From IMG/VR virus record IMGVR_UViG_3300036770_006296, positions 1 through 64,000 of that record: a stretch of 64,000 nucleotides of DNA. The stretch is one strand, 5' to 3'. The notes beneath the pieces are model-generated. The model was given only the letters and a program-made list of their open reading frames with translations. It searched no databases and was not told the DNA's origin. Of the stretch, positions 18,363 to 58,521 are shown piece by piece. The position numbers were made by a program, and so were the translations under genes. Numbering within the stretch: the first letter of the stretch is position 1; the number at the start of each line of letters is the position of its first letter.

Positions 18363-20365
18363 TGGCTGGAATAAAATATTTAACGGACATATACGAAAAA
18401 AAAGGAAAGTCCTTTATTGAAAGCCTTTTCAATAAAAATTTAACTGTAACGGAAAATCTAGACGGTCCTTCTTTTTCTTTTGAAAGAGATTTTACTGGCG
18501 ATAACATATCTTTCTATAAAAAGGATCAAGATAATCCTATAACCAAGGTGGATAGGATATTAATGAGATATTACGAAAAGCCCATAAGCTATATAGAATC
18601 TCTATCTCTTGAAATCACAGATCAACTTCCTAAGGGATGGAGATTCGGAATGGTTTACTTTCCTAACAAAAAGCCAGTCAGAATTGAATACGATAGGATA
18701 CCAAAGAATCATCTTGTTTTAACACATGTTGTTGTTAGGGATGAATTTGGTGATATCATTAAAAATTTACAGGATAGGAATGAGCTCGATGAATGGGCGG
18801 ACAAGCTAGGAGTTGAAAGATCACCTATTATATTCCAAGGTAAACTTGATAGGGATCAAAAGATAGCTATAATGGATTTCCTTTCCACCCCATTAGCAGA
18901 TCTTAAAAATAAATTCCAGACCTCTAGTTTTAGTAACTATCTAATTTCAATCTTAAATAAAAAAGTAGAAAGAACAACACTTGGTAAGGATTTACAAGGT
19001 GAGATAGATTCCCTAGTTTTTAGATTCGAGGATGAAGACGGAAAAGAGGAAACTGTTTTAGCAAAAATGGTTGACCCTATTTTTCATGAGATAAACAGAA
19101 GCAGAAAAGTTACTCAAACATCTTATTTTCCTAGTGATGTTTATTCTTTGTGTCTTATAGATGTAATGAATTTTATACTAGAGACAGGAGTAGAAAACTT
19201 TATGGCTGAAGGCAATGATCCAGAGGAAAGATACATCAGTTTTGTTTTTGATGTATTTAAGAAGTTTGTATACGAGGAGGGTGAGAAATATGTAGGTGCA
19301 GATTTTCAAAAACCAGAATACTTGAAAACCGAAGGATTTGAAATAAATAAGGATTTAATAACTGACGAAGAAATTTTAAAGTCTATAGAAGACGACGAAG
19401 TTTATATAGACATTCTACAAATGATCCTTAACTCTTTTAGAAAGCTTAAAAGAAAACCACATGGATTTTTTACAGAGGGGCTAATCCAGCAATTTAATAT
19501 GCTAGTTGAAGATATTGCTAGCTATATAAACGCCAAAAAGAAAGATTTAGTTGAAGAGTCTTTAGGAGTTCCCAGCTTTGTTTGGTTTAAAAAAGTCGGT
19601 AGTAAATTTAATCCGATAATGAGTGACGAGGATGAAATAGACGAACTAGAAGAAATCATAGAAGGTTCTTCTTCTGGAGATGTTCTACCTCTTAATGAAT
19701 CTGAAATCCCAGAGACTATAACTGAAGACGAGAAGAAAGAAGACGCTTCAGAATTTTTCTCATTTAAGGATTTTAAAAAGGTAGTAGCTACACACAAAGA
19801 AAAAAAGAAGATAAAGATATTAAACGAGAATAGCCAGAAGGTAAATATTGTAATAGGTAAATTTCAGCCATTTAACAATGGGCATTTAAAAATGTGTACA
19901 AGATTAAAGAAGGAAAACAATTTACCGGTATTTCTATGTGTAGTACATCCTGGAAGTGAGCCAGGATCTAAATATCCATTCTCTGAGGATTTAATAAAAA
20001 AATCTATAGGTGCTTTAACATCAGAGAACAACAAACTTTTTGCTGGATATGAAATAATTCCGTCCAACCTTTTGGAGGATGCTCTAAATGCAGTAGTAAA
20101 ACATGCTAATCCTGCTTCTATATGTATAGGGGAAAGGGATTTTGAAAATATGATTCTTCAAAGAGAATGGGTAAGAAATAAATATGATTTAGAAGGAGGA
20201 GATATAGAAATATACAAAACACCGCAATGGTCAAATAATAATGATATTAGAACCTATATAAAAGATGGGGATTTCCAGCAATTTAAAAGTAAAGTCCCTA
20301 AATCTGTAGCGGTTCTTTTCAATGAATTTACTAAACAAATAAACGGATCCGAGAAGGATATATAA
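18350..20365 (+). CDS. Fusion of an RNA-ligase-like nucleotidyltransferase fold (degenerate) and a HIGH-superfamily cytidyltransferase-like domain
   Basis: N-terminal VTENLDG in the position of ligase motif I (K-x-D-G), and later IDSLVFRF/LAKMVD. C-terminal IVIGKFQPFNNGH resembles GRFQPxHxGH. Confidence 0.6.
   Translation: MFKLMAGIKYLTDIYEKKGKSFIESLFNKNLTVTENLDGPSFSFERDFTGDNISFYKKDQDNPITKVDRILMRYYEKPISYIESLSLEITDQLPKGWRFGMVYFPNKKPVRIEYDRIPKNHLVLTHVVVRDEFGDIIKNLQDRNELDEWADKLGVERSPIIFQGKLDRDQKIAIMDFLSTPLADLKNKFQTSSFSNYLISILNKKVERTTLGKDLQGEIDSLVFRFEDEDGKEETVLAKMVDPIFHEINRSRKVTQTSYFPSDVYSLCLIDVMNFILETGVENFMAEGNDPEERYISFVFDVFKKFVYEEGEKYVGADFQKPEYLKTEGFEINKDLITDEEILKSIEDDEVYIDILQMILNSFRKLKRKPHGFFTEGLIQQFNMLVEDIASYINAKKKDLVEESLGVPSFVWFKKVGSKFNPIMSDEDEIDELEEIIEGSSSGDVLPLNESEIPETITEDEKKEDASEFFSFKDFKKVVATHKEKKKIKILNENSQKVNIVIGKFQPFNNGHLKMCTRLKKENNLPVFLCVVHPGSEPGSKYPFSEDLIKKSIGALTSENNKLFAGYEIIPSNLLEDALNAVVKHANPASICIGERDFENMILQREWVRNKYDLEGGDIEIYKTPQWSNNNDIRTYIKDGDFQQFKSKVPKSVAVLFNEFTKQINGSEKDI
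20357..20365 (+). promoter_or_regulatory. Putative late promoter GATATATAA overlapping the upstream stop codon
   Basis: The motif ends in the TAA of the preceding gene and precedes the peptidase gene. Confidence 0.55.
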
Positions 20366-20382
20366 GTTAATTAAAAAGATGA

Positions 20383-21243
20383 ATGAAAAGAATATTATCC
20401 TTTAATGACTTTGCAATTTTTGAATATAACACTTTTAACTACACTCCAGGAGATAAGTTAAATGAAGCTATATACCTAGACGAAAGAGAGAAAAGACCAG
20501 TAGACGAAGCGGCACTCAAGAAAATGAAAGCCTGCGTGTTTTTCTTAAACGGATCTTATCCGTTTTTTTCATCAATGCTATCTAGATTGATAATCAGAGA
20601 AAACAGAAATCTTAGATTTAAAACAATGGCAACTGACGGTGTTAGTATACACTATGATCCTGATTTTGTAAATGAGCACAGCGATGCAGAGATAATGTGG
20701 GTAATAGCACATGAGGTTTTACATAATACTCTACTTCACTTCCTAAGATGCCCTAAAGATAAAACTAAAGCGGGTGTATGGAATGTTGCAGCAGATTATG
20801 CACTTAACCAGGTATTAACTCCGATAGACCCAGGAACAATAAACACCGCTAAACCTGAACCTGTATCTAAGGGAGGAGTAGGAAAAATGGTGAAGGGTTC
20901 TTTATATCCAGGATGCGGGCACGTTTCTTACGATCGTGAGTTTGTTAACAGAAGTGCAGAATGGATATACGAAAAACTTTTAGCTAATGGATATGTTCCT
21001 GAGCCAGGTGAAGATACACCACCACCCCCACCACCCCCACCACCTCCACAGGATCCTGTAGTTGGTGATATCATATATGATAAAGATAATGATTCTTATG
21101 GTATAATTAAATCTATAGACGATTCTTCAGGCGAGCTTGAGTATGATCCTATACCTAAAAATAAGGTTAAAGAATACTTACAAAGAAAAGCTAAGGGTGA
21201 GAATATATTGGGAGACGATATAGAAAAAGAATTAGACTTCTAA
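20383..21243 (+). CDS. DUF2201-N-like HExxH metallopeptidase (stand-alone N-half)
   Basis: TMATDG..IHYDPDFV, VIAHEVLHNTLLH and WNVAADYALNQ, then a poly-Pro linker and a short SH3/KOW-like C-terminus. CTS-like N-terminus MKRILSFNDF. Confidence 0.8.
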   Translation: MKRILSFNDFAIFEYNTFNYTPGDKLNEAIYLDEREKRPVDEAALKKMKACVFFLNGSYPFFSSMLSRLIIRENRNLRFKTMATDGVSIHYDPDFVNEHSDAEIMWVIAHEVLHNTLLHFLRCPKDKTKAGVWNVAADYALNQVLTPIDPGTINTAKPEPVSKGGVGKMVKGSLYPGCGHVSYDREFVNRSAEWIYEKLLANGYVPEPGEDTPPPPPPPPPPQDPVVGDIIYDKDNDSYGIIKSIDDSSGELEYDPIPKNKVKEYLQRKAKGENILGDDIEKELDF

Positions 21244-21256: not shown

Positions 21257-22240
21257 ATGAAAGCTAAGATAACTGACGTTAAAATACAAAAACTCCAGGA
21301 AGATGGAGGAGGGGGAGGAGGAAAGGGCCCAAGGAATCCTAAAAATGTAGAAGTTTGGCCAGGAGATGTTAATGATGTACCGGATAGGGACGAAGATGGA
21401 AACATCAAAGGAGATGACGTAGAAGGAGATTTTAAAAGATATTCCGGACCTAAAACAGATCCTGGATATAATCCAGGAGAAGTACTTAGACCTGGAGAAT
21501 TAGGGGATGTTGGAGATGGTGGAAATATAGACCCAGATAAGATAGCTGAGGAATGGGATGATATAACTAGAATAGCAACCACGGGAGGAAGTGCTCAACC
21601 ACCTCCTTCTATAAGAAGAGCTTTAACTAAACTAAAAGAGCCTGTTATTGACTGGAGAGCTGAGTTGGATAAATTTATAGATCAGGCAATATCCAAATCT
21701 AAGTACACATTGCCGGTTAGAAGATTTTTAGGAGCTGGGAAAGCACAGTATGGATATAAGAAATATAAAGAGGATTTTCAAAATATAGTTATTGCTATAG
21801 ATACATCCGGTTCTATTATTGATCCTTTATTAAAACAATTTATTTCAGAGGTCATTAAAATAACCGAAATATACAAACCCGATGAAACGACAATAATATA
21901 TTGTAGCGACAATATAGATAATATAGATACATTCGGTGTGGGTGAAGAGCCAGATTTAAATAAGATAGCATCAACTGGAGGAAACTATGAAGGATTCCAT
22001 CCACCTTTTAAATGGGTACAAAAAAATATGATTGACGAGGGAAAAACACCTTCGGTTTTTATTTATTTTACTGATGGATATGCAGATTTTCCACCACCCG
22101 AATATTATGATATAGAGAATTATTCAGATAGGTGTATTTGGGTACTCATTTCTTTTAATGATGAACCATTTCCTAGACCCGTTCCTTTTGGTGAAAGAAT
22201 AGATATAGTTTTAGCCAATAATAACGTAAAAAGAATTTAA
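21257..22240 (+). CDS. VWA-domain protein (DUF2201 C-half-like), copy A
   Basis: IDWRAEL, MIDAS motif AIDTSGSI, and TGGN...IYFTDG. Confidence 0.8.
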   Translation: MKAKITDVKIQKLQEDGGGGGGKGPRNPKNVEVWPGDVNDVPDRDEDGNIKGDDVEGDFKRYSGPKTDPGYNPGEVLRPGELGDVGDGGNIDPDKIAEEWDDITRIATTGGSAQPPPSIRRALTKLKEPVIDWRAELDKFIDQAISKSKYTLPVRRFLGAGKAQYGYKKYKEDFQNIVIAIDTSGSIIDPLLKQFISEVIKITEIYKPDETTIIYCSDNIDNIDTFGVGEEPDLNKIASTGGNYEGFHPPFKWVQKNMIDEGKTPSVFIYFTDGYADFPPPEYYDIENYSDRCIWVLISFNDEPFPRPVPFGERIDIVLANNNVKRI

Positions 22241-22243
22241 TCT

Positions 22244-23251
22244 ATGAAAGCAAAAATAACAGGCGTAAGAATTCAGCAAATGAAAGAATCCGGTGGTGGT
22301 GGTGGGGGAGGAGACGTAGAGGGGGACGACTTCGGTATCAGAAATCCTGAAAATGTCGACGAGTGGAAAGACGATGTTCCTGATGGGGATACTCCTGAAA
22401 GAGACAAAGATGGTAAAATAAAAGAGGAGGATTCCGAGTTCAAAAGATCTGATAGATCCGGAGGTGGTGGAGGTCCAGCTCCTGACGGATACAATCCTGG
22501 TGAAGTTCTTAGACCTGGGGAGTTGGGGGATCTTGGTGGAGACAGTGGACTTAACGGAGAAGCATTAGCTGAAGAATGGGAAGATATTACTAGAATAGCT
22601 GCAGCAGCGGGTAACGTTCCAGCATCTATAAAAAGAGCACTGACCAAAGTTAAAAGACCTGTTATTGATTGGAAGGCTGAATTAGCTAAGTATATAGACG
22701 AGGCAATAGCTAAATCTAAATATACATTACCAGCTAGAAGATTTTTAGGAGCGGGAAAAGCACAATATGGATATAAGAAATACAAAGAGGATTTCGAAAG
22801 CGTGGTTGTTGCAATAGATACTTCCGGATCTATCACTAGAGAAATGATAGAACAATTTTTAGGGGAGGTTATGAATATAACACAAGCATATACCCCTAAG
22901 AAAACCATTATATTATACTGCGACACCCAAGTTTACGAGCCGGATATATTAGAGCCAGGAGACACTCCTGATTTTAATAAAATAGCCGGAGGTGGTGGAA
23001 CATATTTTTGGCCTCCATTCAAATGGGTAGAAAGAAATTTAATAGAAGAAGGCGAAAAACCGACAGTATTTATATACTTTACTGACGGTGAAGCAAACTT
23101 CCCGTCTGCGGATGACTATGAGATTTCTCAATATGAAAATAGATGTATTTGGGTATTTCTCACATTTAATGATGAACCCTATCCAAACCCGCAACCTTTT
23201 GGCGAGAGAATAGACATAGTACTTGCCAATAAGAATGTAAAAAGAATATAA
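22244..23251 (+). CDS. VWA-domain protein (DUF2201 C-half-like), copy B; tandem paralog
   Basis: AIDTSGSI, GGGGT.F and IYFTDG; long near-identical blocks shared with copy A (e.g. RRFLGAGKAQYGYKKYKEDF, YNPGEVLRPGELGD). Confidence 0.8.
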   Translation: MKAKITGVRIQQMKESGGGGGGGDVEGDDFGIRNPENVDEWKDDVPDGDTPERDKDGKIKEEDSEFKRSDRSGGGGGPAPDGYNPGEVLRPGELGDLGGDSGLNGEALAEEWEDITRIAAAAGNVPASIKRALTKVKRPVIDWKAELAKYIDEAIAKSKYTLPARRFLGAGKAQYGYKKYKEDFESVVVAIDTSGSITREMIEQFLGEVMNITQAYTPKKTIILYCDTQVYEPDILEPGDTPDFNKIAGGGGTYFWPPFKWVERNLIEEGEKPTVFIYFTDGEANFPSADDYEISQYENRCIWVFLTFNDEPYPNPQPFGERIDIVLANKNVKRI

Positions 23252-23257
23252 AAAGTA

Positions 23258-23266: not shown

Positions 23267-23284
23267 AGAAAATAAAAAAATAAA

Positions 23285-24889
23285 ATGGGCAAAAGAATTT
23301 ATAATTTTAACGAGTTTGTCAATGAATCCTATATGAGTGAGGGATTTTTCTCTGATTTGGGATCGAAAATATCATCATGGGCAAAAAGTTTATATAATGC
23401 AGTTAAGTCAGGATTAGTTAGATTGATATCATCAGGACCTAAGAAAGGAACCCCTAGGGTGGCATTGTTTGACGATAGCAAGAGTGATTCAATCTTAAAT
23501 CAGGTTAACAATTTCTACAAAGGTACTGAATTCTATAATATGAATAACCTTGAGATCCCTGAGACCCTTGAAGAAAGCTTCTTATGGGAAGATGCAGTTC
23601 CTTTAACTTATCCTATAGAAGACGACGTACCAAACTATTCTGAACAGGAGATAAAAGAGACTATTAAAAGAAACATGAGAGATATCTTTAGAATTGCAGA
23701 TGAAATGGAAGCAGCTAAAGAATCTGGAGCATCTGATGACGAGTTAGATGATATTTACAGAGGAATTCTAGATGTTAAACCAATATTCATATACGGAGCT
23801 CCAGGGATTGGTAAAACTCAAATAGTAGCCCAAGTTTGTGACGAATTAGGAAAAGAATTATACGGACATAAACTATCTTTAGTTAACGTAGATGGTGAGA
23901 ACGCAGAGCCTGTTGATTTTGCTGGGGTACCTAGTGTAGTAGATATTGAATCACCAAATGAAGAAAACCCAATTGGAAGAGGTGTTACCAGATCTAATAT
24001 TAATGTTGATATACTCCCTTATGATAACGGAAAAAATCAAAAAGGGGGAATCCTATTCATCGACGAGTTAAACCGTATGCCTAAAGAAGTTATTAAGATA
24101 TTTATGAAACTTGCTCAGTCCAGAAGAATCGGTAACAATTATAAGGTTCCTTCTAGATGGTATATCGTTGCAGCAGGTAACCGAAAAGAAGATGATAGAG
24201 GAAATATCGAAGAATTAGGTACTGCTCTTAGAGACAGATTCGAAGCTGTTAACTTTGTACCAACTATAAAAGGATTTAGAGGATATATCGAGGGAAGCAG
24301 ATACAAAGACGTTGTTCTTCCAGAGCTTCTAGATTTCTTAGAATTCCAGCCAGTATACTTCCATAATTTGGATCCGGCTCTTAAGAAAACAAAATATCCA
24401 ACTCCTAGGGCTTGGGTAGATGCTTCGAACTCTTTAAGAAGAGTTATTAGAGAATTGGAAGCTAAAGGAGTTACAAAGATTCCGGAAGATGTGATAAGAA
24501 AAGAATTCTCTAAAAATGTTGGATATGATGCAACATCAGCTTTCTTGAATTTCTACAAGATTGCTAAAGATATTCCAGTAAAAGATCTTATTCTACCTTA
24601 CACGGATCCCGATAAAGCTCCAGTTCCTGCGGATAAAGGGGATAGACCAGATTATACACACGCTTTATTTGGAGCGGTTATGAGAAAAAGCACAGAGATG
24701 CAATTAACACCTAAAGAGGTTTGTAATTATGCTAAATGGTTAGAAAGAATTGATAAAGAGGAAGAAGGAGCAGCACAGATTACAACTTTCTTTAAGCTTC
24801 ATCCAGAATTGGCAAAAGATCCTGCAATGTACTCTTGCTTAGGACCTTTGGCTGATAAATGGGGAGCTAAAGTTGGACAAGAGTTCTAA
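23285..24889 (+). CDS. MoxR-type AAA+ ATPase, locus 1
   Basis: Walker A GAPGIGKT, Walker B ILFIDE, AAGNR, ALRDRF and PTPRAW. CTS-like N-terminus IYNFNEFVNES. Confidence 0.85.
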   Translation: MGKRIYNFNEFVNESYMSEGFFSDLGSKISSWAKSLYNAVKSGLVRLISSGPKKGTPRVALFDDSKSDSILNQVNNFYKGTEFYNMNNLEIPETLEESFLWEDAVPLTYPIEDDVPNYSEQEIKETIKRNMRDIFRIADEMEAAKESGASDDELDDIYRGILDVKPIFIYGAPGIGKTQIVAQVCDELGKELYGHKLSLVNVDGENAEPVDFAGVPSVVDIESPNEENPIGRGVTRSNINVDILPYDNGKNQKGGILFIDELNRMPKEVIKIFMKLAQSRRIGNNYKVPSRWYIVAAGNRKEDDRGNIEELGTALRDRFEAVNFVPTIKGFRGYIEGSRYKDVVLPELLDFLEFQPVYFHNLDPALKKTKYPTPRAWVDASNSLRRVIRELEAKGVTKIPEDVIRKEFSKNVGYDATSAFLNFYKIAKDIPVKDLILPYTDPDKAPVPADKGDRPDYTHALFGAVMRKSTEMQLTPKEVCNYAKWLERIDKEEEGAAQITTFFKLHPELAKDPAMYSCLGPLADKWGAKVGQEF

Positions 24890-41348: not shown

Positions 41349-42386
41349 TTGATTAATTACTACGAAATTTTAGGCGTCCAAGAAAATGCCGACCAGGAGT
41401 CTATAAAGAAAGCTTACAGACAAATGGCTAAGAAATTCCACCCCGACCGGAACAAAGATCAAGGGGCGGAGGAAAGGTTCAAGAAAATTACAGAAGCTTA
41501 TGAAAACATAGGAGATCCTACTAAGAGGAGAGAATATGACAATAAGAGAAATTTTAAAGATCATTTCTTCGGCGGGTTTGAAAATTTTAATCACTGGAAT
41601 CAAAAAGATCCTTTTGCAAGCCACTATAATCCAGGATTTCCTCAAGATCCTAAGGGAGGACACATTAGTATCACGCTAAAAGTGACATTGAATGATGTGC
41701 TAAATGGAGTAGAGAAGAAAATCAAATTAAAAAGAGATAAAAAATGTAAATCATGTGAAGCCACGGGAGCAGAAGGAGGTGCGTCCTTTCAAACTTGCGG
41801 AAATTGTAACGGAACTGGACAAATTACAATAAATAAAACCAATGGATTTGTACAGATTCATTCAGTTACCGTTTGTAATATTTGTAGAGGCAATGGGAAA
41901 ACTATACTGGAATATTGTATGAGCTGTCTAGGTAAGGGATTGATAGCAGAAGATGATCTGATTGATATAAATATACCCGCAGGATCTTCAGATGGAATGC
42001 AATTTGTAGTGGCAAATAAAGGAAACGAGGGTAAAGGAAACGGATTACCAGGGGATCTTTATGTGAAGATAAGTGAGATCGAGAATGAAAATTTTGTGAG
42101 AAGAGGAATCGATCTTATATCAGCAAAACAAATAACCTTTATAGACGCTGTTCTTGGAACTAATATAGATGTTGAGATGCCGGACGGGGAGGAATTAAAA
42201 GCTATTATTTCCCCAGGTACAATTCCGGGTACCATCCTTAAATTTTCTCAAAAAGGAATACCTAATATGGGATACGGAGGCAGGGGAGATTTCTTGGTGG
42301 AAATAAACGTAAAGATTCCTTCAGATCTTAATAAGGAAGAAATAAGATTCATGGAGGAGTTAAGAGAGTACGATATGTTTAAATAA
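41349..42386 (+). CDS. dnaJ: DnaJ (Hsp40) co-chaperone, full type I architecture
   Basis: J-domain with HPD, a G/F-rich region, four CxxCxGxG-type repeats (CKSCEATG, CGNCNGTG, CNICRGNG, CMSCLGKG) and a C-terminal domain. Confidence 0.92.
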   Translation: MINYYEILGVQENADQESIKKAYRQMAKKFHPDRNKDQGAEERFKKITEAYENIGDPTKRREYDNKRNFKDHFFGGFENFNHWNQKDPFASHYNPGFPQDPKGGHISITLKVTLNDVLNGVEKKIKLKRDKKCKSCEATGAEGGASFQTCGNCNGTGQITINKTNGFVQIHSVTVCNICRGNGKTILEYCMSCLGKGLIAEDDLIDINIPAGSSDGMQFVVANKGNEGKGNGLPGDLYVKISEIENENFVRRGIDLISAKQITFIDAVLGTNIDVEMPDGEELKAIISPGTIPGTILKFSQKGIPNMGYGGRGDFLVEINVKIPSDLNKEEIRFMEELREYDMFK

Positions 42387-46515: not shown

Positions 46516-47685
46516 ATGGAAGAAATAGATTACATGTCAATGAGCTTGGAAGAGCTCAATCAAAAACTGCAGGAGTTCCAAAAAAAATCCTCCGATTTTT
46601 ACAATACTGAACAGGGCATTAAACTAACTCTTAATAGTATATACGGAGCGACGGGAAATCAATACTTTGCTCTTTTCAATCCGGACGTAGCAGAGAGTGT
46701 AACTCTACAAGGTCAAGATATATGGAAATTTGCAGAGAAAATAGTTAACAAGTACTTCAATGAGATGTGGCACCTTGACACTGAGCTTCATGAGAAGATG
46801 GGTGTTAGGAACGTAAGAAAGATTACTCTTGATTTTATTATATACGGGGACACTGACTCTAACTATATAAACCTTGGAGCAGTAATGGACTCTTGTGAAT
46901 TTGATTACGATCCTTTTGATTTCGTAAAAAAACTCAACGATTATAGGCTCAAGGACTACATAAAAAAATGTTACGACATCTATTCTAAGAAATGGAATAC
47001 TGAGAACTATCAAGACTTTGAACTGGAAAGTTTATCTTATGCAGGTATATTCTTAGGAAAAAAGAAATACGTACTACACATAGCATGGCAAGATCCTAAT
47101 AAGGATTTATTCCCTAGACTATCTAAAATTAAATCCACAGGTATCGAATTAGCACAGGGAGGTACTGCTCCTTTTGCTAGGGAGAAACTAACATTCCTCC
47201 TTAGACATATCTTTGAAAAGGGTAAGTCATTTGATATAAGGGAATTTGTAAAGATACTGAAGGATATCAAGAATGAATTTAAAGTACAAAGTCCGGATCA
47301 AATATCAATAGGTACTTCAGTTAACAATATAGAAAAGTTCATAGTAAATGATACAAGTAAGTTCGAGGTTGCTAAGGGATGTCCAATGCACGTTAGAGCT
47401 GCTGGATATCATAACTATATCTTGAATAATTCTAAACATAAAGCAAAGTACAGCTTAATAAGATCCTCTGAGAAGATAAAATACTATTACGTTAAAGTTA
47501 ACAACGAAAGGGAGAATAACGTATTCGGATATCTTAATGGTTCTTATCCCTACGAGTTTGCTCCTCCTGTTGATTTCGACGAGCAGTTTAATCGAGTTAT
47601 CCTTGATCCTATAAATAGATTCATTGAAGCTATGGGATATACACCGCTTTCTCCTAATCTTTTACTAGTTAGGGCTCTTTTTTAA
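46516..47685 (+). CDS. polB: Family B DNA polymerase, C-terminal half (motifs B and C, thumb)
   Basis: KLTLNSIYG (motif B), YGDTDS (motif C), KKKYV, KSTGIE and HVRAA. Confidence 0.9.
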   Translation: MEEIDYMSMSLEELNQKLQEFQKKSSDFYNTEQGIKLTLNSIYGATGNQYFALFNPDVAESVTLQGQDIWKFAEKIVNKYFNEMWHLDTELHEKMGVRNVRKITLDFIIYGDTDSNYINLGAVMDSCEFDYDPFDFVKKLNDYRLKDYIKKCYDIYSKKWNTENYQDFELESLSYAGIFLGKKKYVLHIAWQDPNKDLFPRLSKIKSTGIELAQGGTAPFAREKLTFLLRHIFEKGKSFDIREFVKILKDIKNEFKVQSPDQISIGTSVNNIEKFIVNDTSKFEVAKGCPMHVRAAGYHNYILNNSKHKAKYSLIRSSEKIKYYYVKVNNERENNVFGYLNGSYPYEFAPPVDFDEQFNRVILDPINRFIEAMGYTPLSPNLLLVRALF

Positions 47686-47728
47686 TTCTTTGCATATTAC
47701 CATAATGTTTTTTTGCTGCTTCTAGTTG

Positions 47729-47737
47729 GATATATAA
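47729..47737 (+). promoter_or_regulatory. Putative late promoter GATATATAA
   Basis: Intergenic, before AAA+ gene 2. Confidence 0.6.
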
Positions 47738-47756
47738 GATATCTAAAAAAATAAAG

Positions 47757-49250
47757 ATGTCTAAAAGAATAAAAAATTTCTCAGATTTTGTTAATGAATC
47801 ATACAGTCCTTCAAAATTAGACGAAGGGTTTCTTTCAACTATAAAGGATTATGCAAAAAGATTTTTTGGTTGGACTGGTAAATTTTTAAAGAGTCTAGCA
47901 CAGGGATTAATAGAGCCTATTCCTTATGGTCCTAAGAAAGGACTTCCTACTATTATGCTTTTCTTACCTGAAAATGGGTCTATCTACAAACAGATGACAG
48001 AATTTGAAATGGGTGTTAATCCTATAAAAGAAGCAAGGATACCTTTGGAATATACAGGAGAAGATCAGAGTGTAAGAAACATCTCTGCTGATCAATTAAA
48101 GCAAGATGTAATAAGATTATATAGAAGTAAAGAAAGAGGTGGTAGGGCTAAGCCTATCTTTATTTACGGAGCTCCTGGTATTGGTAAAACAGAAATAGTC
48201 GGACAAGCAGCTGATGAATTGGGTGTTCCGGTAATGAAGCTAGATTTACAATTTATGAATCCGGAGGATTTCTTAGGTATTCCTAGTAGACACGATATAG
48301 AGCCAGTTCAGGTAGAAGGTGGAAAATTGATTAGTTCAGGTAAAGGATTTACAAGATCTAATCCACCAATTTTACTTCCAACTGACAACGGTAATGAAGA
48401 TAGAGGAGGTATAATATTTATGGATGAGATGAACAGAGCTAATAAAGCAGTTCTTAACTCCATTATGCAATTTGTACAAAAAGGAGAAATAGGTCCTTAT
48501 AAATTACCAGATAGATGGGTGATTGTAGCAGCTGGTAACAGACCAGAAGAAGCTGAAGGTGTTGCTGATTTCGACTTTGCATTAGCAGACCGATTCACTA
48601 TTAAAAACTACGTCCCTACAATCGAGGGATATGCTTCTTGGGCTGATAAGAACGAAAAGATCCTTCCAGAGTTAGTTACTTTCTTAACGTTTAACCAAGA
48701 TTACTTCCATAATCTAGATGCCGATAAAAAATCTCTTAACTATCCTACGCCTAGATCTTGGACCGACGGAGCATTAATACTCCACGACGAGATCCAATAT
48801 AAAGGAGTAGATTCTTGGAGAGATATTTCTAGGCAAGATATATTAGACATCTTCTACGATCAAGTTGGTCCCGAAGCAGCTGGTAAATTTGTAGCTTACT
48901 TAGACATTTTAAGAAAAGTTACGGATTCTGATATGGAAGATATGATCAACAATCCTATGTCTGCTAAAATGGTACCAGAGGCACAATCCACAAAGAGCGT
49001 ACTTTATGGACTTATAGAAATGGTGATGAAGAGAGTTAAATCGTATGACACACAGAAATTCTATAACGTTATGGAGTATTTCAATAGATACAACGAGCTG
49101 GAACCGCTAAGCTGGCTATATAAAGATATCTTATCTAAATATCCTCAGTTCAAATTTGGAGGAAGTTCTAACACTCCGGAGGATGAATTAAAACACAAAG
49201 CAGCCTTAATGATTACAAAAGGAGCTAAAGATAAAGGTCTACAAGGATGA
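47757..49250 (+). CDS. MoxR-type AAA+ ATPase, locus 2
   Basis: GAPGIGKT, IIFMDE, AAGNR, ALADRF and PTPRSW; leader IKNFSDFVNES; shares a GPKKG-containing N-domain with the locus 1 ATPase. Confidence 0.85.
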   Translation: MSKRIKNFSDFVNESYSPSKLDEGFLSTIKDYAKRFFGWTGKFLKSLAQGLIEPIPYGPKKGLPTIMLFLPENGSIYKQMTEFEMGVNPIKEARIPLEYTGEDQSVRNISADQLKQDVIRLYRSKERGGRAKPIFIYGAPGIGKTEIVGQAADELGVPVMKLDLQFMNPEDFLGIPSRHDIEPVQVEGGKLISSGKGFTRSNPPILLPTDNGNEDRGGIIFMDEMNRANKAVLNSIMQFVQKGEIGPYKLPDRWVIVAAGNRPEEAEGVADFDFALADRFTIKNYVPTIEGYASWADKNEKILPELVTFLTFNQDYFHNLDADKKSLNYPTPRSWTDGALILHDEIQYKGVDSWRDISRQDILDIFYDQVGPEAAGKFVAYLDILRKVTDSDMEDMINNPMSAKMVPEAQSTKSVLYGLIEMVMKRVKSYDTQKFYNVMEYFNRYNELEPLSWLYKDILSKYPQFKFGGSSNTPEDELKHKAALMITKGAKDKGLQG

Positions 49251-50308
49251 GAAAGCTAAACGAAAACAAATATAAAACCGGAAAAGTAATAACATCTTTC
49301 TCTAATTATGTTAGATTCATAAACGAATCATCCTTATATGATCCGGATGAGGTCAACAAAAAAATAAGAAGGGTTATACTTTGGTTAAATATAAACCAGG
49401 GATTTTATGCTGAGCTTCTTAGCCATGTAAATATATTTGGATCTAGCGATCTTAATCCTAAAACAATGTGTACAAACGGTAGGGATATAATATTCCATCC
49501 TGAATTTGTTATGAGACAATCTGAGCCAGCTTTGAGATTTGTCCTTTGTCATGAAATATTACATTGCATAGGTGATCATATGAATAGGAGAGGAAGCAGA
49601 GATCCTATGGGATGGAACATAGCTTGTGACTATGCAATAAATCCATTACTCAAGGATGAAGCCGGATTCGAATTTCCCGTAGATGAAAACGGTAATAGAG
49701 AAGGATTATATGATTCAAGGTTCGAAGGGATGAGGGCAGAAGACATATATGATGCACTAGAAGAATCAGGAGAACTGAAAAAATTAATAGGAGACTCTAA
49801 AGTACAAAAGACTGTAGAGACTACAGGTAAAGTTGAAGATGAGGATAAAGAATTAGCAGACCCTGACGAAGAAATGGTGATACAAAAAGGGGATGACCCA
49901 GGAGAAGAGGGAGAAGATGGAGAACCAGGAGAAGATGGAGAACCAGGAGAAGATGGAGAGCCAGGAGAAGATGGAGAACCAGGAGATCAGCCAGGAGATC
50001 AGCCAGGAGATCAACCAGGAGATCAACCAGGAGATCAACCAGGAGATCAACCAGGAGACCAGCCAGGAGATCAACCAGGAGATCAACCAGGAGATCAACC
50101 AGGAGATCAACCAGGAGATCAACCAGGAGATCAACCAGGAGATCAACCAGGAGATCAACCAGGAGATCAACCAGGAGATCAACCAGGAGATCAACCGGGT
50201 GGAGATAAAAAGAGTCTTCCAAGAGTTGGCCAGAAGGTAATAACAAAAGACGGAAGGGAAGGAACTATAACTAAGGTTTATCCTAACGGAGATATAGAAA
50301 TTTCTTAA
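49247..50308 (+). CDS. DUF2201-N-like HExxH metallopeptidase (stand-alone N-half) with a repeat linker, locus 2
   Basis: TMCTNG..I.FHPEFV, VLCHEILHC..DH and WNIACDYAINP, then (GEDGEP)4(GDQP)18 and an SH3/KOW-like C-terminus. Confidence 0.8.
   Translation: MRKLNENKYKTGKVITSFSNYVRFINESSLYDPDEVNKKIRRVILWLNINQGFYAELLSHVNIFGSSDLNPKTMCTNGRDIIFHPEFVMRQSEPALRFVLCHEILHCIGDHMNRRGSRDPMGWNIACDYAINPLLKDEAGFEFPVDENGNREGLYDSRFEGMRAEDIYDALEESGELKKLIGDSKVQKTVETTGKVEDEDKELADPDEEMVIQKGDDPGEEGEDGEPGEDGEPGEDGEPGEDGEPGDQPGDQPGDQPGDQPGDQPGDQPGDQPGDQPGDQPGDQPGDQPGDQPGDQPGDQPGDQPGDQPGDQPGDQPGGDKKSLPRVGQKVITKDGREGTITKVYPNGDIEIS
49910..50197 (+). repeat. In-frame tandem repeats: 4 x 18 nt (GEDGEP) then 18 x 12 nt (GDQP)
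   Basis: Units ggagaagatggagaacca (49910-49981) and ggagatcaacca (49982-50197), with only synonymous variation. Confidence 0.95.
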
Positions 50309-50310
50309 TT

Positions 50311-51249
50311 ATGTTTATAAAAAACGGAGATTATTCAGTAGTATCTGACGACAAGAATAAAGAAAATGGAAAACCTGGGGATCAAAGAAAATCTTCTGGA
50401 GGAGAGGCCGAATTTTCAGATACCCCTGAGACAATGACTGACATACCTAAAGTGGGTCAAGAAACTCCTGGTATAAAAACATTCAGAGATTTTGAGGGAC
50501 CACAAGATTCCAAGGAAAAAGCTAAAGAGATAAAACCTAATAAGCCATCTAAAATATTTAAGGGTGATCTTCCAAAAAGAAATTGGCAGGATATAGCTAA
50601 TCAGGCTATGTCTAGAAATAAAGTTAGTGACAAAGCTAAAAGACTAATAAAAGCTTTAAAAACCAGTGAGCCTTTAGTTGATTGGAAGAAAGAGCTTAAA
50701 AAATTCTTTGATAACACTTTTAAATCCGATGAATGGGTTCTTCCTAATAAAAGATTCCTTGCTGGAGGTGACATGATATACGGGAGAAGAAACGTAGGTG
50801 ATGACACTTTAAAAACTATAGTTGCCGCAGTTGATACATCTTCATCTATTTCAAAAGAACAGATAAAGGTATTTATCAACGAAATAATGTATCTCACAAA
50901 AACATTTGATGCTGATAAAACTATAATCATATACTGTAGTGATCATATAGACAATATTGATATAGTTAAAAAGGGAGGATCTCCAGATCTAACAAAGATA
51001 GCTTCAACCGGTGGAAACGCGGAAGGATTTATACCGCCATTTCAGTGGGTAGAAAAAAATAAGATCAAGCCATCCGCATTTATTTATTTAACAGACACAG
51101 GAGGAGAAATGCCAGACCCTAGTAAATATGGTATAAATAAATACAGAAAGAAGGTGCTTTGGTTTATATGTTCTCCTGAAATGTATAATCCACCATCCTT
51201 CGGCAAGATACTTTTTGCCCCTGTGGGATCCATAAAAGTTAAAAGATAG
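50311..51249 (+). CDS. VWA-domain protein (DUF2201 C-half-like), locus 2
   Basis: VDWKKEL, AVDTSSSI, TGGNAEGF and IYLTD. Confidence 0.8.
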   Translation: MFIKNGDYSVVSDDKNKENGKPGDQRKSSGGEAEFSDTPETMTDIPKVGQETPGIKTFRDFEGPQDSKEKAKEIKPNKPSKIFKGDLPKRNWQDIANQAMSRNKVSDKAKRLIKALKTSEPLVDWKKELKKFFDNTFKSDEWVLPNKRFLAGGDMIYGRRNVGDDTLKTIVAAVDTSSSISKEQIKVFINEIMYLTKTFDADKTIIIYCSDHIDNIDIVKKGGSPDLTKIASTGGNAEGFIPPFQWVEKNKIKPSAFIYLTDTGGEMPDPSKYGINKYRKKVLWFICSPEMYNPPSFGKILFAPVGSIKVKR

Positions 51250-51250
51250 T

Positions 51251-52108
51251 ATGAAAAATTTAGTAGGATTTAATCTTTTTGAAAGTTATAGTTTTGATTA
51301 TAACGATGCTTTTTTAAATAAGGACTACGAAAAACATCTGAATATTGCTTTCATGGGAATGGCTAGAGCTAACGAGGATAAAAATTTCTTAAGATGGCTT
51401 CTATATTATTCTTATTTGGATGCTATTTATAGCTTAGGTTTAACGAGGTCTGACTATGAATACATGGGTAAACTTGTAGATAAACCATATCCCGAAGGTT
51501 TTTTAACTAGCTTCGATTTCAAGACAGAGCTAGACTCACTTGGAATGAAGAGTGTGTCTTGGCTTAGTAAGAATTTTTTAGCTGAAAAAATAAAAAGATT
51601 ACCGGCAGAAACCCCAGTGATAGGGATGGAAACAAAAAATATTTTGGCTTCTTCTATACGAGAGTCTATAATAAATGCAACAACCGATATTTTCTTACCT
51701 TCTAACATTAATAACATACAGAAGTTAAAATATCTAGATTATGTAAAAAAATACACAAAGGAATCATACTTTAATTCTTTGCTTGTTGATGATATAGTAG
51801 TTAGTCAAATAGATAAAAATTTTAAATCAGCTTCTGATCTTTATAAGGGAATGGAATTCTCAATTGATTTAGGGAAAAGACTATTTAATTTTCTTAAGAT
51901 ATTTTCTATTCACAATATGGAATATTTTAAGAATATTCCACTCCCTGAGAGGATGGCAAATTATGTAGTTTTATACTTCAAAGAGTCTGAAGATTCGTTT
52001 AAAGCTGCAGATGAACTTAGAAAATCTAATGTAGGGATATATAACAGAATAAAAGATCTTTTACCTAATATAGACACTGCAGCAGATCTAGGAGATCTAG
52101 GATTTTAA
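51251..52108 (+). CDS. Hypothetical helical protein with CTS-like N-terminus
   Basis: Begins MKNLVGFNLFES and ends AADLGDLGF. Confidence 0.5.
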   Translation: MKNLVGFNLFESYSFDYNDAFLNKDYEKHLNIAFMGMARANEDKNFLRWLLYYSYLDAIYSLGLTRSDYEYMGKLVDKPYPEGFLTSFDFKTELDSLGMKSVSWLSKNFLAEKIKRLPAETPVIGMETKNILASSIRESIINATTDIFLPSNINNIQKLKYLDYVKKYTKESYFNSLLVDDIVVSQIDKNFKSASDLYKGMEFSIDLGKRLFNFLKIFSIHNMEYFKNIPLPERMANYVVLYFKESEDSFKAADELRKSNVGIYNRIKDLLPNIDTAADLGDLGF

Positions 52109-52127
52109 AAATAAATAAAACAAAAAG

Positions 52128-52574
52128 ATGACTTTCGACGAATTCAAAGACAAAGGAACAGAATTAGAAATGGACCTAGATATGGTTACAAGAAAAACCA
52201 AATCTTTAGGATCATCATCTGATATTGATGATCATTTCATAAACCTTCTTTTATTCCAAGCACAGCTTAAAATAATGCACTGGGGTACAGAATCATATGC
52301 TCAGCACAACGCATTCGGAGATACTTATGGAAGTATCGATGAAGGCTTAGATGCTTTAGTAGAATCATATCAAGGATATCACGGAAGAATAGATTTCGGG
52401 TGTGGATGTGAGTTTATAAGTTTTAAAAACGTTGAGTGCGACTCTTGGCTTAATTCTATGCTAGAATGTCTAGATAACTTAAGGGGAATGTTAAAAGAAT
52501 CAGATTTACAAAATCTTATTGATGAGCTAATAGCAGCAGTTTCTAAACTTAAATATCTATTAACTCTTAAATAA
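52128..52574 (+). CDS. Ferritin/Dps-like four-helix protein (DUF5856-like)
   Basis: LKIMHWGTESYAQHNAF...YGSIDEGLDALVESYQG...LQNLIDE......KLKYLLTLK. Confidence 0.75.
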   Translation: MTFDEFKDKGTELEMDLDMVTRKTKSLGSSSDIDDHFINLLLFQAQLKIMHWGTESYAQHNAFGDTYGSIDEGLDALVESYQGYHGRIDFGCGCEFISFKNVECDSWLNSMLECLDNLRGMLKESDLQNLIDELIAAVSKLKYLLTLK

Positions 52575-58014: not shown

Positions 58015-58521
58015 ATGAGTTCAATAAAAAGATTTGAACAGTTTCTTAATGAAGAAAAATGGATCAAAGGCGCTATAGAACATCCAGGAGCTCTTAGAAG
58101 ACATTTTCATAAGAAGGAGGGAGAAAAGATCACTAAAACTGAAATAGGTGATGAAATTGCCGATCTTATGAGAAAAGATATGGACAAGAAAAAACCTGGT
58201 GCTCAGTTAGGTAAAAGAGATGCTACTCTTTACAAAAGACTTCAATTAGCAAAAACCCTCAGAGGTATGAATGAGGATCACGATGAGATGGATAATTATA
58301 TGTTCTTTGCAAATGTTTCTAATATAAAAAGAATGTGTGAGGAGATATTACAAATGGATCCTTCACAAGTTGATTCGCTTCTTAGTGACGGACACGGATG
58401 GGCTACTGATCACATAGCAACTTCTAAAGATGATGTTGAAGAAGTTTATGGATTTTTAAAATCCTCAATGGAATTACATCATGATGAAGAGGGAATGATC
58501 TCCGATGGAGAGGAATGTTAA
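58015..58521 (+). CDS. Hypothetical protein with CTS-like N-terminus
   Basis: MSSIKRFEQFLNEE leader; basic KWIKGAIEHPGALRR domain; internal MNE site; acidic C-domain. Confidence 0.55.
   Translation: MSSIKRFEQFLNEEKWIKGAIEHPGALRRHFHKKEGEKITKTEIGDEIADLMRKDMDKKKPGAQLGKRDATLYKRLQLAKTLRGMNEDHDEMDNYMFFANVSNIKRMCEEILQMDPSQVDSLLSDGHGWATDHIATSKDDVEEVYGFLKSSMELHHDEEGMISDGEEC

What the first reader, a model, noticed from the sequence alone, without database searches (positions are those of the whole stretch)
47757..51249. Second, paralogous AAA+ / split peptidase / VWA locus with rearranged order
The order here is AAA, peptidase, VWA under one late motif, whereas locus 1 is peptidase, VWA, VWA, AAA. 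The split falls at the equivalent position in both loci, and both ATPases share an unusual N-domain (EGF[FL]S...GPKKG.P) after the tag. Independent retention of the same break argues that it is ancestral and functional, not a sequencing artefact. The two ATPases might form distinct or mixed hexamers.
Basis: partly seen in the sequence, partly recalled or inferred. Interest (0 to 1): 0.75.

Follow-up and report, generated by a model that had tools for sequence, protein, structure and literature searches.

The report
Split phage ATPase-peptidase-VWA module, duplicated
An uncultured freshwater jumbo phage carries two old copies of a known phage ATPase / metal-protease–VWA module. In both copies the protease–VWA gene has been cut into two real, conserved genes that probably re-associate through small matching end-pieces.

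Summary
Window 47757-51249 encodes three genes: a MoxR-type AAA+ ATPase (497 aa), a zinc peptidase (DUF2201_N, 353 aa) and a VWA protein (DUF2201, 312 aa). A paralogous locus lies at 20383-24889 (peptidase, VWA, VWA, ATPase).

The module is already known. It matches N4 gp24/gp25 and the jumbo-phage MoxR–vWA pair, where peptidase and VWA are one protein of about 385 aa.

The split is real:
- Four metagenome assemblies (at least three independent) agree across the junction with no indels.
- At least eight diverged relatives keep separate genes, with different frames and spacers.
- Both loci break in the same low-complexity linker.

Trees place the fission before the duplication. A small clade of fused genes nests inside the split clade, which suggests re-fusion.

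Split peptidases end in a conserved KOW-like tail, and split VWA proteins start with a conserved hairpin-like head. All 11 fused relatives lack both. I infer a non-covalent clasp.

Locus 2 has the ancestral gene order and locus 1 is the rearranged one. The "late" class of the shared upstream motif is untested. One close relative has deleted locus 2 but kept locus 1.

The N-terminal tag resembles T4 capsid-targeting propeptides; this is a hypothesis.

This is a new variant of a known kind, of moderate interest.

The parts
47728..47738 (+). Promoter-like motif GGATATATAAG, 29 nt upstream of the AAA2 ATG. The temporal class is unknown.
   Evidence: The identical 11-mer precedes locus 1. GGATA[TA]ATAA sits 13-31 nt before many ORF starts genome-wide.
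47757..49250 (+). AAA2, a MoxR-type AAA+ ATPase of 497 aa. It has an N-terminal tag (residues 1-14, ends FVNE|S), a lineage-specific N-domain (residues 15-137), Walker A GAPGIGKT (48168-48191) and Walker B IIFMDE (48411-48428).
   Evidence: (phrog_1297, E 4.6e-52).
49247..50308 (+). PEP2, a stand-alone zincin peptidase of 353 aa. It has a tag-like stretch (residues 16-28), the motif HEILHCIGDH (49550-49579), a disordered acidic/PGDQ linker and a KOW-like tail.
   Evidence: H102, H106 and H111 invariant; E103 in at least 90% of rows; core pLDDT 88-98; selecase/SPRTN-like minimal zincins, weak.
49901..50196 (+). Low-complexity repeat coding for (GEDGEP)n and (PGDQ)n: an 18-nt unit x 4.3 copies, then a 12-nt unit x 18.3 copies. 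This is the expanded interdomain linker. The copy number is not verified by reads.
   Evidence: AF2 pLDDT is below 55.
50213..50305 (+). PEP2 C-terminal tail (residues 323-353, LPRVGQKVITKDGREGTITKVYPNGDIEIS). It is a three-strand KOW-like piece and is proposed as half of a clasp.
   Evidence: 110/120 homologs; pLDDT 81-93, three strands; uL24/Tudor pieces, weak; KOW over the cut-off in orthologs L006/L014, not in the window's own tail; 10 synonymous vs 2 non-synonymous codon changes vs L001.
50311..51249 (+). VWA2, 312 aa. It has a conserved N-terminal head (50311-50346, MFIKNGDYSVVS), a low-complexity stretch, a helical region equal to the C-terminal part of DUF2201_N, and a VWA domain (50818-51213) with MIDAS DTSSS (50833-50847).
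   Evidence: The VWA fold of the fused homolog model matches integrin I, Rpn10 and Ro60 VWA domains.
20356..20366 (+). The same GGATATATAAG motif, 27 nt upstream of the PEP1 ATG.
20383..21243 (+). PEP1, the paralogous stand-alone peptidase (286 aa). It has HEVLHNTLLH, a poly-Pro linker and its own conserved tail.
21257..22240 (+). VWA1a, an extra VWA copy (327 aa, MIDAS DTSGS). It is absent from the four related locus-1 contigs.
22244..23251 (+). VWA1b, the conserved locus-1 VWA (335 aa). It is the ortholog of the single VWA in relatives (76-83% identity in L019-L021, 52% in L022).
23285..24889 (+). AAA1, the paralogous ATPase (534 aa). It has the same tag and N-domain as AAA2.

Best explanation
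Both loci are real, expressed-as-separate-genes versions of a known two-gene phage module. That module is a MoxR-type AAA+ ATPase plus a zinc-metallopeptidase–VWA protein (DUF2201_N + DUF2201; N4 gp24/gp25).

In this lineage of uncultured freshwater jumbo phages, the peptidase–VWA gene underwent fission inside its naturally disordered, expandable interdomain linker. The whole module was then duplicated. One copy (locus 2) kept the ancestral order. The other (locus 1) moved its ATPase to the end, and in this genome it also gained a second VWA gene.

Shown:
- The catalytic motifs are intact: Walker A/B, HExxHxxxxH and MIDAS DxSxS.
- The split is conserved.
- The paralogy and its order relative to the fission hold in the trees.
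- Conserved end-pieces occur only in split forms.

Inferred:
- The peptidase and VWA halves still work as one unit. They would be held together non-covalently by the peptidase's C-terminal KOW-like three-strand tail and the VWA's N-terminal beta-hairpin-like head.
- The VWA/MIDAS domain selects a protein target, the AAA+ ring remodels or unfolds it with ATP, and the tethered minimal zincin cuts it.

Most likely role, at lower confidence (about 0.4): processing or assembly of virion or prohead proteins. The ATPases and peptidases carry T4-capsid-targeting-like N-terminal tags that end in hydrophobic-x-Glu, and the clade encodes a T4 gp21-type prohead protease.
For: - Domains and motifs.
- The fused form is the norm elsewhere. 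phrog_1314 spans both halves. Phage inbricus (N4-like) gp69 and S-TIM5 gp056 are single proteins with DUF2201_N + DUF2201. Of the best 150 family representatives, 97 carry the VWA in the same protein.
- The split is real. Four assemblies, at least three independent, show no indels. Split orthologs occur in L001/2/5/6/11/14 and L019-22, in three different frame relations and with 1-47 nt spacers.
- The break sits in the same linker in both loci. LR756500 carries a fused gene with a (GQ)n linker at that position.
- Trees: the AAA1 and AAA2 clades are each supported 100/100 and are sister at 84/74. The fused partners LR756500, N4-like and S-TIM5 fall outside. The VWA and PEP trees agree.
- Both loci co-occur about 25 kb apart in at least four records.
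- End-pieces: the tail is in 109-110/120 PEP homologs and the head in nearly all complete split VWA homologs (81 of 113 by a strict pattern; by eye most of the rest carry a variant). Both are absent from 11/11 fused homologs. Tail pLDDT is 81-93. KOW scores over the cut-off in orthologs. The tail is under protein-level purifying selection.
- The chaperone–cochaperone reading and a virion-assembly proposal for the fused jumbo-phage pair are in the literature: PMC7824862.
- Tag and protease.
Against: - No direct evidence that PEP and VWA bind each other.
- The window's own tail does not reach the Pfam KOW cut-off, and the Foldseek hits for it are weak (E 4-5).
- PEP1's tail and the VWA1 heads differ in sequence from the locus-2 ones, so the clasp idea is less clear for locus 1.
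- Both loci sit among replication and nucleotide-metabolism genes. N4 gp24/gp25 are middle genes (PMC4193335). This fits a non-structural role at least as well as a structural one.
- The phage's own record (81% complete) contains no prohead protease or capsid gene to compare.
- The sister relation of the AAA1 and AAA2 clades has only moderate support (84/74).
Confidence: 0.68

Rival explanations
1. The break is an assembly or sequencing artefact, or a recent pseudogenising mutation of a fused gene.
For: A 12-nt x 18 repeat lies just upstream of the junction and could not be checked with reads. Fused genes exist in some relatives.
Against: Four metagenome assemblies from different studies (two may be one data set) agree across 50225-51300 with no indel. 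The repeat unit is a multiple of 3. At least eight diverged relatives keep two ORFs. Hundreds of database clusters are peptidase-only or VWA-only with conserved ends. All catalytic motifs are intact.
Confidence: 0.02
2. A programmed frameshift or readthrough at the PEP/VWA junction produces a single fused protein, so the split is only apparent.
For: The genes are tightly packed: 2 nt apart here and 1-18 nt apart in the locus-2 relatives.
Against: The frame relation between the two ORFs differs among orthologs. It is same-frame with a stop plus 18 nt in L005, and other relations occur in L001, L006, L011 and L014. There is no conserved slippery sequence. Every VWA ORF starts with a conserved Met-led head.
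Confidence: 0.03
3. After fission the peptidase and the VWA protein became functionally independent. The conserved tail and head then bind other partners, for example the ATPase or a substrate, rather than each other.
For: Locus 1 has two VWA genes for one peptidase in this genome. The tail and head sequences differ between the two paralog families. No binding evidence exists.
Against: Peptidase and VWA genes remain strictly adjacent and co-oriented in every relative examined. The tail and head are present in split forms and absent in all 11 fused forms, which is what is expected if they substitute for the covalent link.
Confidence: 0.15
4. The module is not a virion-assembly factor. It acts in the infected cell during the replication period, for example by remodelling or degrading host proteins or defence factors, or by assembling replication complexes. 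The N-terminal tag is then something other than a capsid-targeting propeptide.
For: Both loci are embedded among the helicase, primase, SSB, split DNA polymerase, clamp and topoisomerase genes. N4 gp24/gp25 are middle genes next to replication genes. The tag-like start occurs on tens of ORFs, more than known CTS sets.
Against: There are no hits to known defence or anti-defence models. The tag's form (targeting-like aromatic residues, then hydrophobic-x-Glu) and the T4-type S77 protease in relatives fit a propeptide. The literature proposal for the jumbo-phage pair is virion assembly.
Confidence: 0.3

Closest known systems
N4 gp24 (AAA ATPase) / gp25 (vWFA-domain protein), core genes of N4-like phages (Schitoviridae)
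   Same: The same two protein families are present. AAA2 hits N4 gp24-like ATPases, and PEP2 + VWA2 together cover phrog_1314 / DUF2201_N + DUF2201. The order is the same, ATPase first, as in locus 2. The neighbourhood is the same, among replication genes.
   Different: In the N4-like phage examined (inbricus), and likewise in S-TIM5, peptidase and VWA are one protein of about 385 aa. The ATPase is about 330-350 aa with no N-domain and no tag. There is one locus per genome.
MoxR AAA+ / vWA (with N-terminal metallopeptidase) chaperone–cochaperone pair of 'group 2.2' jumbo phages (Iyer et al. 2021, Viruses 13:63, PMC7824862)
   Same: It is a jumbo-phage setting with the same domain set. That paper proposes a role in virion assembly with peptidolytic processing. 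This genome also encodes a DnaJ, as that paper notes for the group.
   Different: The published description is of a fused vWA-peptidase protein. It does not describe gene fission, duplication into two loci, the KOW-like tail and head, or the ATPase N-domain.
Fused homologs in huge uncultured phages (LR756500.1; P0182 on a 423-kb contig)
   Same: These are the closest fused relatives, at 34% (LR756500) and about 60% (P0182) identity to VWA2 over the aligned conserved part. They have the same ATPase N-domain and tag, and a long low-complexity linker at the position of the break.
   Different: They are single ORFs of 490-645 aa. They lack the tail and head motifs. Some carry DnaJ-like CxxCxGxG pairs around the linker.
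Cellular MoxR–VWA pairs such as RavA–ViaA (own knowledge, not tested here), and the MoxR–vWA system of Acidianus two-tailed virus cited in PMC7824862
   Same: An AAA+ ATPase of the MoxR type is paired with a VWA/MIDAS partner encoded next to it.
   Different: They have no peptidase. AAA2 is below the Pfam cut-offs for the specific MoxR models AAA_3 and bpMoxR. There are no sequence hits to solved structures.
T4 capsid targeting sequences of internal proteins (Mullaney & Black 1996, as reviewed in PMC9026906)
   Same: Both are short N-terminal leaders shared by otherwise unrelated proteins, with aromatic or hydrophobic positions followed by hydrophobic-x-Glu. A T4 gp21-type protease occurs in the same phage clade.
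   Different: The tag here is about 13-14 aa with a different consensus, M(K/R)xh(K)xFxxF(I/V/L)NE. It occurs on far more ORFs. Neither cleavage nor packaging has been shown.

Membership tests
MoxR-type AAA+ ATPase (Pfam AAA_5 / AAA_3; phrog_1297; N4 gp24-like) | AAA+ P-loop core with Walker A GxxGxGK[ST] and Walker B hhhhDE | tested here: met
   GAPGIGKT and IIFMDE in AAA2; GAPGIGKT and ILFIDE in AAA1. AAA_5 scores 36.4 and 38.1 bits against a cut-off of 22. phrog_1297 E 4.6e-52 and 8.5e-46.
MoxR-type AAA+ ATPase (Pfam AAA_5 / AAA_3; phrog_1297; N4 gp24-like) | Match to the MoxR-specific models (AAA_3, bpMoxR) over their curated cut-offs | tested here: not met
   AAA_3 scores 24.1 bits and bpMoxR 25.7 bits, both against a cut-off of 27. 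It is therefore a divergent, phage-specific branch. 'MoxR-type' rests on AAA_5, on the VWA partnership and on database annotations of relatives.
MoxR-type AAA+ ATPase (Pfam AAA_5 / AAA_3; phrog_1297; N4 gp24-like) | Encoded next to a VWA/MIDAS partner | tested here: met
   This holds in both loci and in all relatives examined.
MoxR-type AAA+ ATPase (Pfam AAA_5 / AAA_3; phrog_1297; N4 gp24-like) | Hexameric ring with ATPase activity (homo- or hetero-hexamer) | not testable with these tools
   No multimer prediction or assay was available.
DUF2201_N + DUF2201 metallopeptidase–VWA protein (phrog_1314; N4 gp25-like) | Zincin HExxH active-site motif in the N-terminal domain | tested here: met
   HEILHCIGDH in PEP2 and HEVLHNTLLH in PEP1. 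H102, H106 and H111 are invariant across 31 homologs and E103 is present in at least 90%. PF13203 scores 87.3 and 67 bits against a cut-off of 23.2.
DUF2201_N + DUF2201 metallopeptidase–VWA protein (phrog_1314; N4 gp25-like) | C-terminal VWA-like domain with MIDAS DxSxS | tested here: met
   PF09967 scores 52.2, 48 and 67.9 bits against a cut-off of 26.4. The motifs are DTSSS, DTSGS and DTSGS. The VWA fold was confirmed on the fused homolog model.
DUF2201_N + DUF2201 metallopeptidase–VWA protein (phrog_1314; N4 gp25-like) | Both domains on one polypeptide | tested here: not met
   There are separate ORFs in both loci and in close relatives, confirmed by independent assemblies. This is a fission variant of the family, not a canonical member.
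KOW / SH3-like small beta-barrel (PF00467) | KOW motif over the Pfam cut-off and a complete five-strand barrel | tested here: inconclusive
   The orthologous tails of L006 and L014 score 32.7 and 33.9 bits against a cut-off of 22.3. The window's own tail does not match KOW. AF2 gives only three strands. Foldseek finds uL24/Tudor pieces at E 4-5. Completion of the barrel by the VWA head is an inference.
T4-type capsid targeting sequence (CTS) propeptide | Short N-terminal leader shared by unrelated proteins, ending in a prohead-protease site (hydrophobic-x-Glu) | tested here: inconclusive
   The form fits for AAA1, AAA2, PEP1, PEP2 and others (against the description). Similarity of form is not proof.
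T4-type capsid targeting sequence (CTS) propeptide | A gp21-type (Peptidase_S77) prohead protease in the same phage | tested here: inconclusive
   It is absent from the window's own 81%-complete record. It is present over the cut-off in the relatives G004 and G001 and in LR756500.
T4-type capsid targeting sequence (CTS) propeptide | Cleavage after the Glu and presence of the mature protein in virions | not testable with these tools
   This needs virion proteomics of a cultured relative.
Known anti-phage defence or candidate systems (PADLOC) | Significant match to a defence-system model | tested here: not met
   There were only P-loop-level hits at E > 8e-5 for the ATPases, and none for the peptidase or VWA proteins.

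The most novel reading that the evidence does not exclude
The two ATPase/peptidase/VWA sets are capsid-targeted cargo. Their shared N-terminal tag would be a T4-CTS-like propeptide that loads them into the prohead, where a gp21-type protease removes it. The tag appears as a similar N-terminal start on tens of other ORFs of this phage, many behind the same GGATATATAA promoter-like motif. The untagged VWA protein would ride in through a split KOW-like beta-barrel formed with the peptidase's tail. The machine would then act inside the maturing head, or be ejected into the next host. It would be the first AAA+ protease-like machine delivered this way, and a natural example of gene fission rescued by a split-domain clasp.
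Probability: 0.15. Interest if true: 0.85.

Novelty: new variant of a known kind. Interest (0 to 1): 0.5.

Why it matters
The MoxR-type ATPase / peptidase–VWA pair is a core gene pair of N4-like phages and is widespread in jumbo phages, yet its function is unknown.

This lineage offers natural experiments on it:
- a clean fission of the peptidase from the VWA adaptor;
- conserved end-pieces that appear only when the link is broken;
- apparent re-fusions;
- a duplicated second set;
- a natural deletion of one set.

Together these features define which parts must stay together, and they give concrete constructs for pull-downs and structures. If the N-terminal tag is a capsid-targeting propeptide, it would also point to where the module works. 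It would also describe a large, previously unrecognised set of head-internal proteins in an abundant group of freshwater phages.

Tried and rejected
- blastn of the locus against deposited phages found nothing.
- PADLOC gave only P-loop noise.
- Sequence search of the PDB gave nothing for AAA2 or VWA2, and only low-complexity hits for PEP2.
- The ESM Atlas search with the ATPase N-domain gave only weak leads (best 0.63; CobS_N at 0.58) and is not used.
- Pfam S77 protease and T4 Gp23 searches in the phage's own record were empty. The record is 81% complete and seems to lack most of the head module, so the propeptide idea could not be checked against its own capsid genes.
Only 50200-51300 was laid, so the AAA2/PEP2 overlap and the repeat copy number are not read-verified.
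It was rebuilt without them.
The clasp is therefore untested structurally.
- I first thought the VWA head was homologous to the 'GSVVQ' strand of fused proteins. I dropped this after the PEP2 model showed PEP2 has its own 'MVIQ' strand at residues 211-213.
- The sigma-70-like promoter count in 47500-52300 matched chance (18 against 17.6 in shuffles). Terminator-like sites numbered 6 against 2.8 expected, but all were short weak stems and none separated the genes.
- With a strict tag pattern, the tag–motif association is not significant (p = 0.06). Only a looser pattern chosen after the fact gives p = 1.2e-4.
- The literature search found no experimental work on N4 gp24/gp25.

Full report
**What is there.**
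The window is the first 64 kb of a single 206,617-bp IMG/VR virus record. The record is linear, about 81% complete and 35% GC. Near-identical sequence is present in subsurface, drinking-water, lake and estuary metagenomes, so this is an uncultured freshwater jumbo phage.

At 47757-51249 there are three tightly packed + strand genes:
- AAA2 (497 aa) is an AAA_5-class ATPase. It is related to phage 'MoxR-like'/N4 gp24-like ATPases (phrog_1297, E 4.6e-52) and has intact Walker A and B motifs.
- PEP2 (353 aa) carries the N-terminal two-thirds of Pfam DUF2201_N, with the motif HEILHCIGDH.
- VWA2 (312 aa) carries the last third of DUF2201_N plus the DUF2201 VWA-like domain, with a DTSSS MIDAS motif.

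A paralogous set lies at 20383-24889, in the order PEP1, VWA1a, VWA1b, AAA1. The exact 11-mer GGATATATAAG precedes both loci, 27 and 29 nt before the first ATG.

**The module is known, and the fused form is the norm.**
PHROG family phrog_1314 (394 positions, misnamed 'HNH endonuclease') is covered by PEP2 at positions 8-162 and by VWA2 at positions 142-388. In the N4-like phage inbricus and in cyanophage S-TIM5, the gene after the ATPase is a single 382-385 aa protein with DUF2201_N and DUF2201.

A profile search of 1.84 billion representatives found 11,941 relatives of the peptidase. Among the best 150, 97 carry the VWA domain in the same protein, with a median length of 469 aa.

N4 gp24 and gp25 ('vWFA domain') are two of 14 core genes of N4-like phages and are middle genes (PMC4193335). 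Iyer et al. [quoted passage not shown] They proposed a role in virion assembly. What is new here is not the module but what has happened to it.

**The split is real and conserved.**
Contigs from four runs, each filed under a different study, were laid on 50200-51300. Two of them gave contigs of identical length and depth and may be one data set filed twice. None shows an indel, and one differs by eight substitutions only.

In IMG/VR relatives at 46-92% identity, the locus is always AAA, PEP, VWA as three ORFs. The frame relation of PEP to VWA and the spacer differ from contig to contig: 1, 2, 5 or 18 nt, with the same frame in L005. Locus-1 relatives are likewise PEP, VWA, AAA, with spacers of 3-47 nt.

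The 120 listed PEP2 homologs, all at 47% identity or above, carry only DUF2201_N. The 120 listed VWA2 homologs, all at 53% or above, carry only the VWA domain, except for three fused proteins and two VWA-length proteins with a partial DUF2201_N match like VWA2's own. This rules out artefact, recent pseudogene and conserved recoding.

**Where the break is.**
The pieces were aligned with fused proteins. Peptidase homology ends at the '...AEDIYD' helix, and VWA-side homology resumes at 'W.DI...'. In between, every fused protein has a low-complexity linker: Pro/Gly-rich in the N4-like protein and (GQ)n in LR756500. Both loci are cut in this linker. AF2 models agree with two well-folded parts joined by a disordered stretch:
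- PEP2: core pLDDT 88-98, linker below 55.
- The fused homolog P0182: peptidase 87-98, linker 29-45, VWA 78-95.

The peptidase core resembles minimal gluzincins (selecase probability 0.96, E 0.03; SPRTN; the BlaR1 protease domain). The VWA part resembles integrin I, Rpn10 and Ro60 VWA domains.

**Order of events.**
In the ATPase tree, the locus-1 and locus-2 types are each monophyletic (100/100) and are sisters (84/74). The partner of the fused LR756500 gene branches outside them, as does a distant split locus (L008). The N4-like, S-TIM5 and phage G ATPases are further out. The VWA and peptidase trees agree on the two clades.

The ATPase N-domain and the tag are shared by both paralogs, and also by ATPases that partner fused genes (L023, L024). 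They are therefore older than the fission.

Both loci occur about 25 kb apart in at least four records: this genome, the L012/L020 contig, G001 and G002. The simplest history is as follows:
1. A fused ancestor with an expandable linker.
2. One fission.
3. Duplication of the three-gene set.
4. Relocation of the ATPase in locus 1.
5. An extra VWA copy (VWA1a) in this genome only. The four related locus-1 contigs have a single VWA that groups with VWA1b.

The canonical order (ATPase first) is that of locus 2, so locus 1 is the rearranged locus.

**Fusions inside the split clade.**
The protein searches returned eleven fused cluster representatives of 490-645 aa (P0178, P0182, P0194, P0241-P0246, P0295, P0301). 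P0178, P0182 and P0194 are 59-62% identical to VWA2 in the conserved part. P0182 sits right after a 513-aa ATPase on a 423-kb contig.

In both the VWA and peptidase trees, these three nest within the otherwise split locus-2 clade. An AU test rejects placing all fused genes together (p = 0.003; the group was named after seeing the tree). Either the gene re-fused once in that sub-lineage, or it split many times. The shared end-pieces of the split genes favour re-fusion.

**End-pieces and the clasp idea.**
Within hypervariable repeats, two short islands are strongly conserved.
- The last ~30 residues of the peptidase have the consensus LPxVGQKVxxxxGxEGxIxKVYPNGDIEI. This tail is in 109-110 of 120 homologs.
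- The first ~12 residues of the VWA protein have the consensus M-h-h-K-K-G-x-Y-s-h-h. This head is in nearly all complete homologs: 81 of 113 by a strict pattern, and by eye most of the rest carry a variant such as KKGEFVIV.

The tail is under protein-level selection, with 10 synonymous against 2 non-synonymous codon differences to L001. AF2 predicts it as three strands at pLDDT 81-93. It matches the Pfam KOW motif over the cut-off in the L006 and L014 orthologs, though not in the window's own copy. It also picks up uL24/Tudor fragments weakly in Foldseek.

A KOW-type barrel needs about two more strands than the tail provides, and the VWA head looks like a two-strand hairpin. None of the 11 fused homologs has either island.

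I therefore infer that tail and head pair to hold the two halves together after the covalent link was lost. This is an inference from phyletic pattern and conservation, and I could not test it structurally. Locus 1 has its own tail (VVGDIIYDKDNDSYGIIKSID...) and head (MKAKITDVKIQ). They are different in sequence but equally conserved.

**Dispensability and the hexamer question.**
One relative (IMG/VR 3300044953_000377; loci L015 and L019) is 85-98% identical in the flanking genes. It has a clean in-frame deletion equivalent to window 47940-51021, leaving a 146-aa ORF that joins the first 75 residues of the ATPase to the last 72 of the VWA protein. The junction is at a short similar peptide, G(L/F)I.P. 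The same contig keeps an intact locus 1. Locus 2 is therefore dispensable in at least one natural background, and AAA1 does not need AAA2. Facultative mixed rings cannot be excluded.

**The tag and the motif.**
AAA1, AAA2 and PEP1 start with a common leader that ends in hydrophobic-x-Glu, for example MSKRIKNFSDFVNE|S. PEP2 has it slightly internally. The fused relatives and tens of other ORFs with no recognisable family also carry it or a looser version of it.

This resembles T4 capsid-targeting sequences. Those are 10-19-residue propeptides on otherwise unrelated internal proteins. Targeting depends on residues 4 and 7, and processing on residues 8 and 10, with cleavage after Glu by the prohead protease (PMC9026906 and PMC5694885).

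Relatives of this phage encode a T4 gp21-type Peptidase_S77 over the Pfam cut-off. The phage's own incomplete record does not. The VWA proteins lack the tag, which would give the clasp a second purpose.

The promoter-like GGATA[TA]ATAA motif sits 13-31 nt before about 20 ORFs. It is enriched before tag-like starts: 12/21 against 55/310, p = 1.2e-4 with a loose post-hoc pattern, but p = 0.06 with a strict one. Its temporal class is unknown, so 'late' remains a guess. I rate the capsid-cargo reading at about 0.15.

**Verdict.**
The order claim is corrected, and the 'late' and 'mixed hexamer' claims remain open. This is a new variant of a known phage module. Its interest lies in the fission/clasp/re-fusion pattern and in the possible link to a capsid-targeting tag, not in a new kind of system.

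Noticed in passing
genome-wide; in the window e.g. 23285, 25165, 25694, 36615, 42740, 47757, 52626, 58015, 62866: Tens of ORFs of unknown function start with a shared leader M(K/R)xh(K)xFxxF(I/V/L)NE(S/G). It resembles T4 capsid-targeting propeptides. The same leader is on homologs in many uncultured huge phages.
   Followed up: partly
window 20356, 47728, 57830; about 25 more sites in the 206-kb record: The promoter-like motif GGATA[TA]ATAA lies 13-31 nt (often exactly 27) upstream of ORF starts. It is enriched before ORFs with the N-terminal leader. No Shine-Dalgarno-like sequence is evident between the motif and the ATG in the sites read.
   Followed up: partly
window 28919-30325 and 46516-47685: The family-B DNA polymerase is encoded as two genes 16 kb apart. 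The N-terminal part hits phrog_2062/262, and the C-terminal part hits PF00136 positions 139-238 with YGDTDS. This is a second case of gene fission in this genome.
   Followed up: no
L015:3421-5097 (relative of window ~46855): A close relative has about 1.7 kb of extra DNA inside the equivalent of the polymerase C-terminal gene. It gives a weak Intein_splicing match (17.9 bits, below the cut-off).
   Followed up: no
L015:5932-6372 (equivalent of window 47757-51249): There is a natural in-frame deletion of most of locus 2 in a relative that keeps locus 1. The junction is at a short peptide similarity between the ATPase N-domain (GLIEPIP...KKGLPTIMLF) and the VWA domain (GFIPPFQW...IKPSAFIYL).
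   Followed up: yes
window 41349-42386: A full-length phage-encoded DnaJ is present (J domain, CxxCxGxG zinc-finger domain, C-terminal domain).
   Followed up: no
L023:7564-9039 (LR756500.1); proteins P0365, P0377, P0379: Fused peptidase–VWA relatives carry pairs of DnaJ-like CxxCxGxG motifs flanking the low-complexity linker. This is another way of pinning the two ends of the linker together.
   Followed up: no
window 58015-58521: A tagged 168-aa ORF has a weak match to the fusellovirus VP2 DNA-binding virion protein family (23.2 bits, cut-off 27).
   Followed up: no
L027:405-2327 and L025:31-1929: The T4 gp21-type (S77) protease domain in relatives is the N-terminal part of 632-640 aa proteins. 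This suggests a protease fused to a long scaffold-like extension.
   Followed up: no
window 62866-64380 and genome 64988-66268: Two adjacent paralogous ORFs (504 and 426 aa) have nearly identical tagged N-termini (MKKQVLSF(N/A)EF(I/V)FEAYN).
   Followed up: no
window 147-11476: Large ORFs at the start of the record (1545 aa with a tail-fibre-like stretch, then 922 and 777 aa) look like the end of a structural module. The rest of that module seems to be missing from the 81%-complete record.
   Followed up: no
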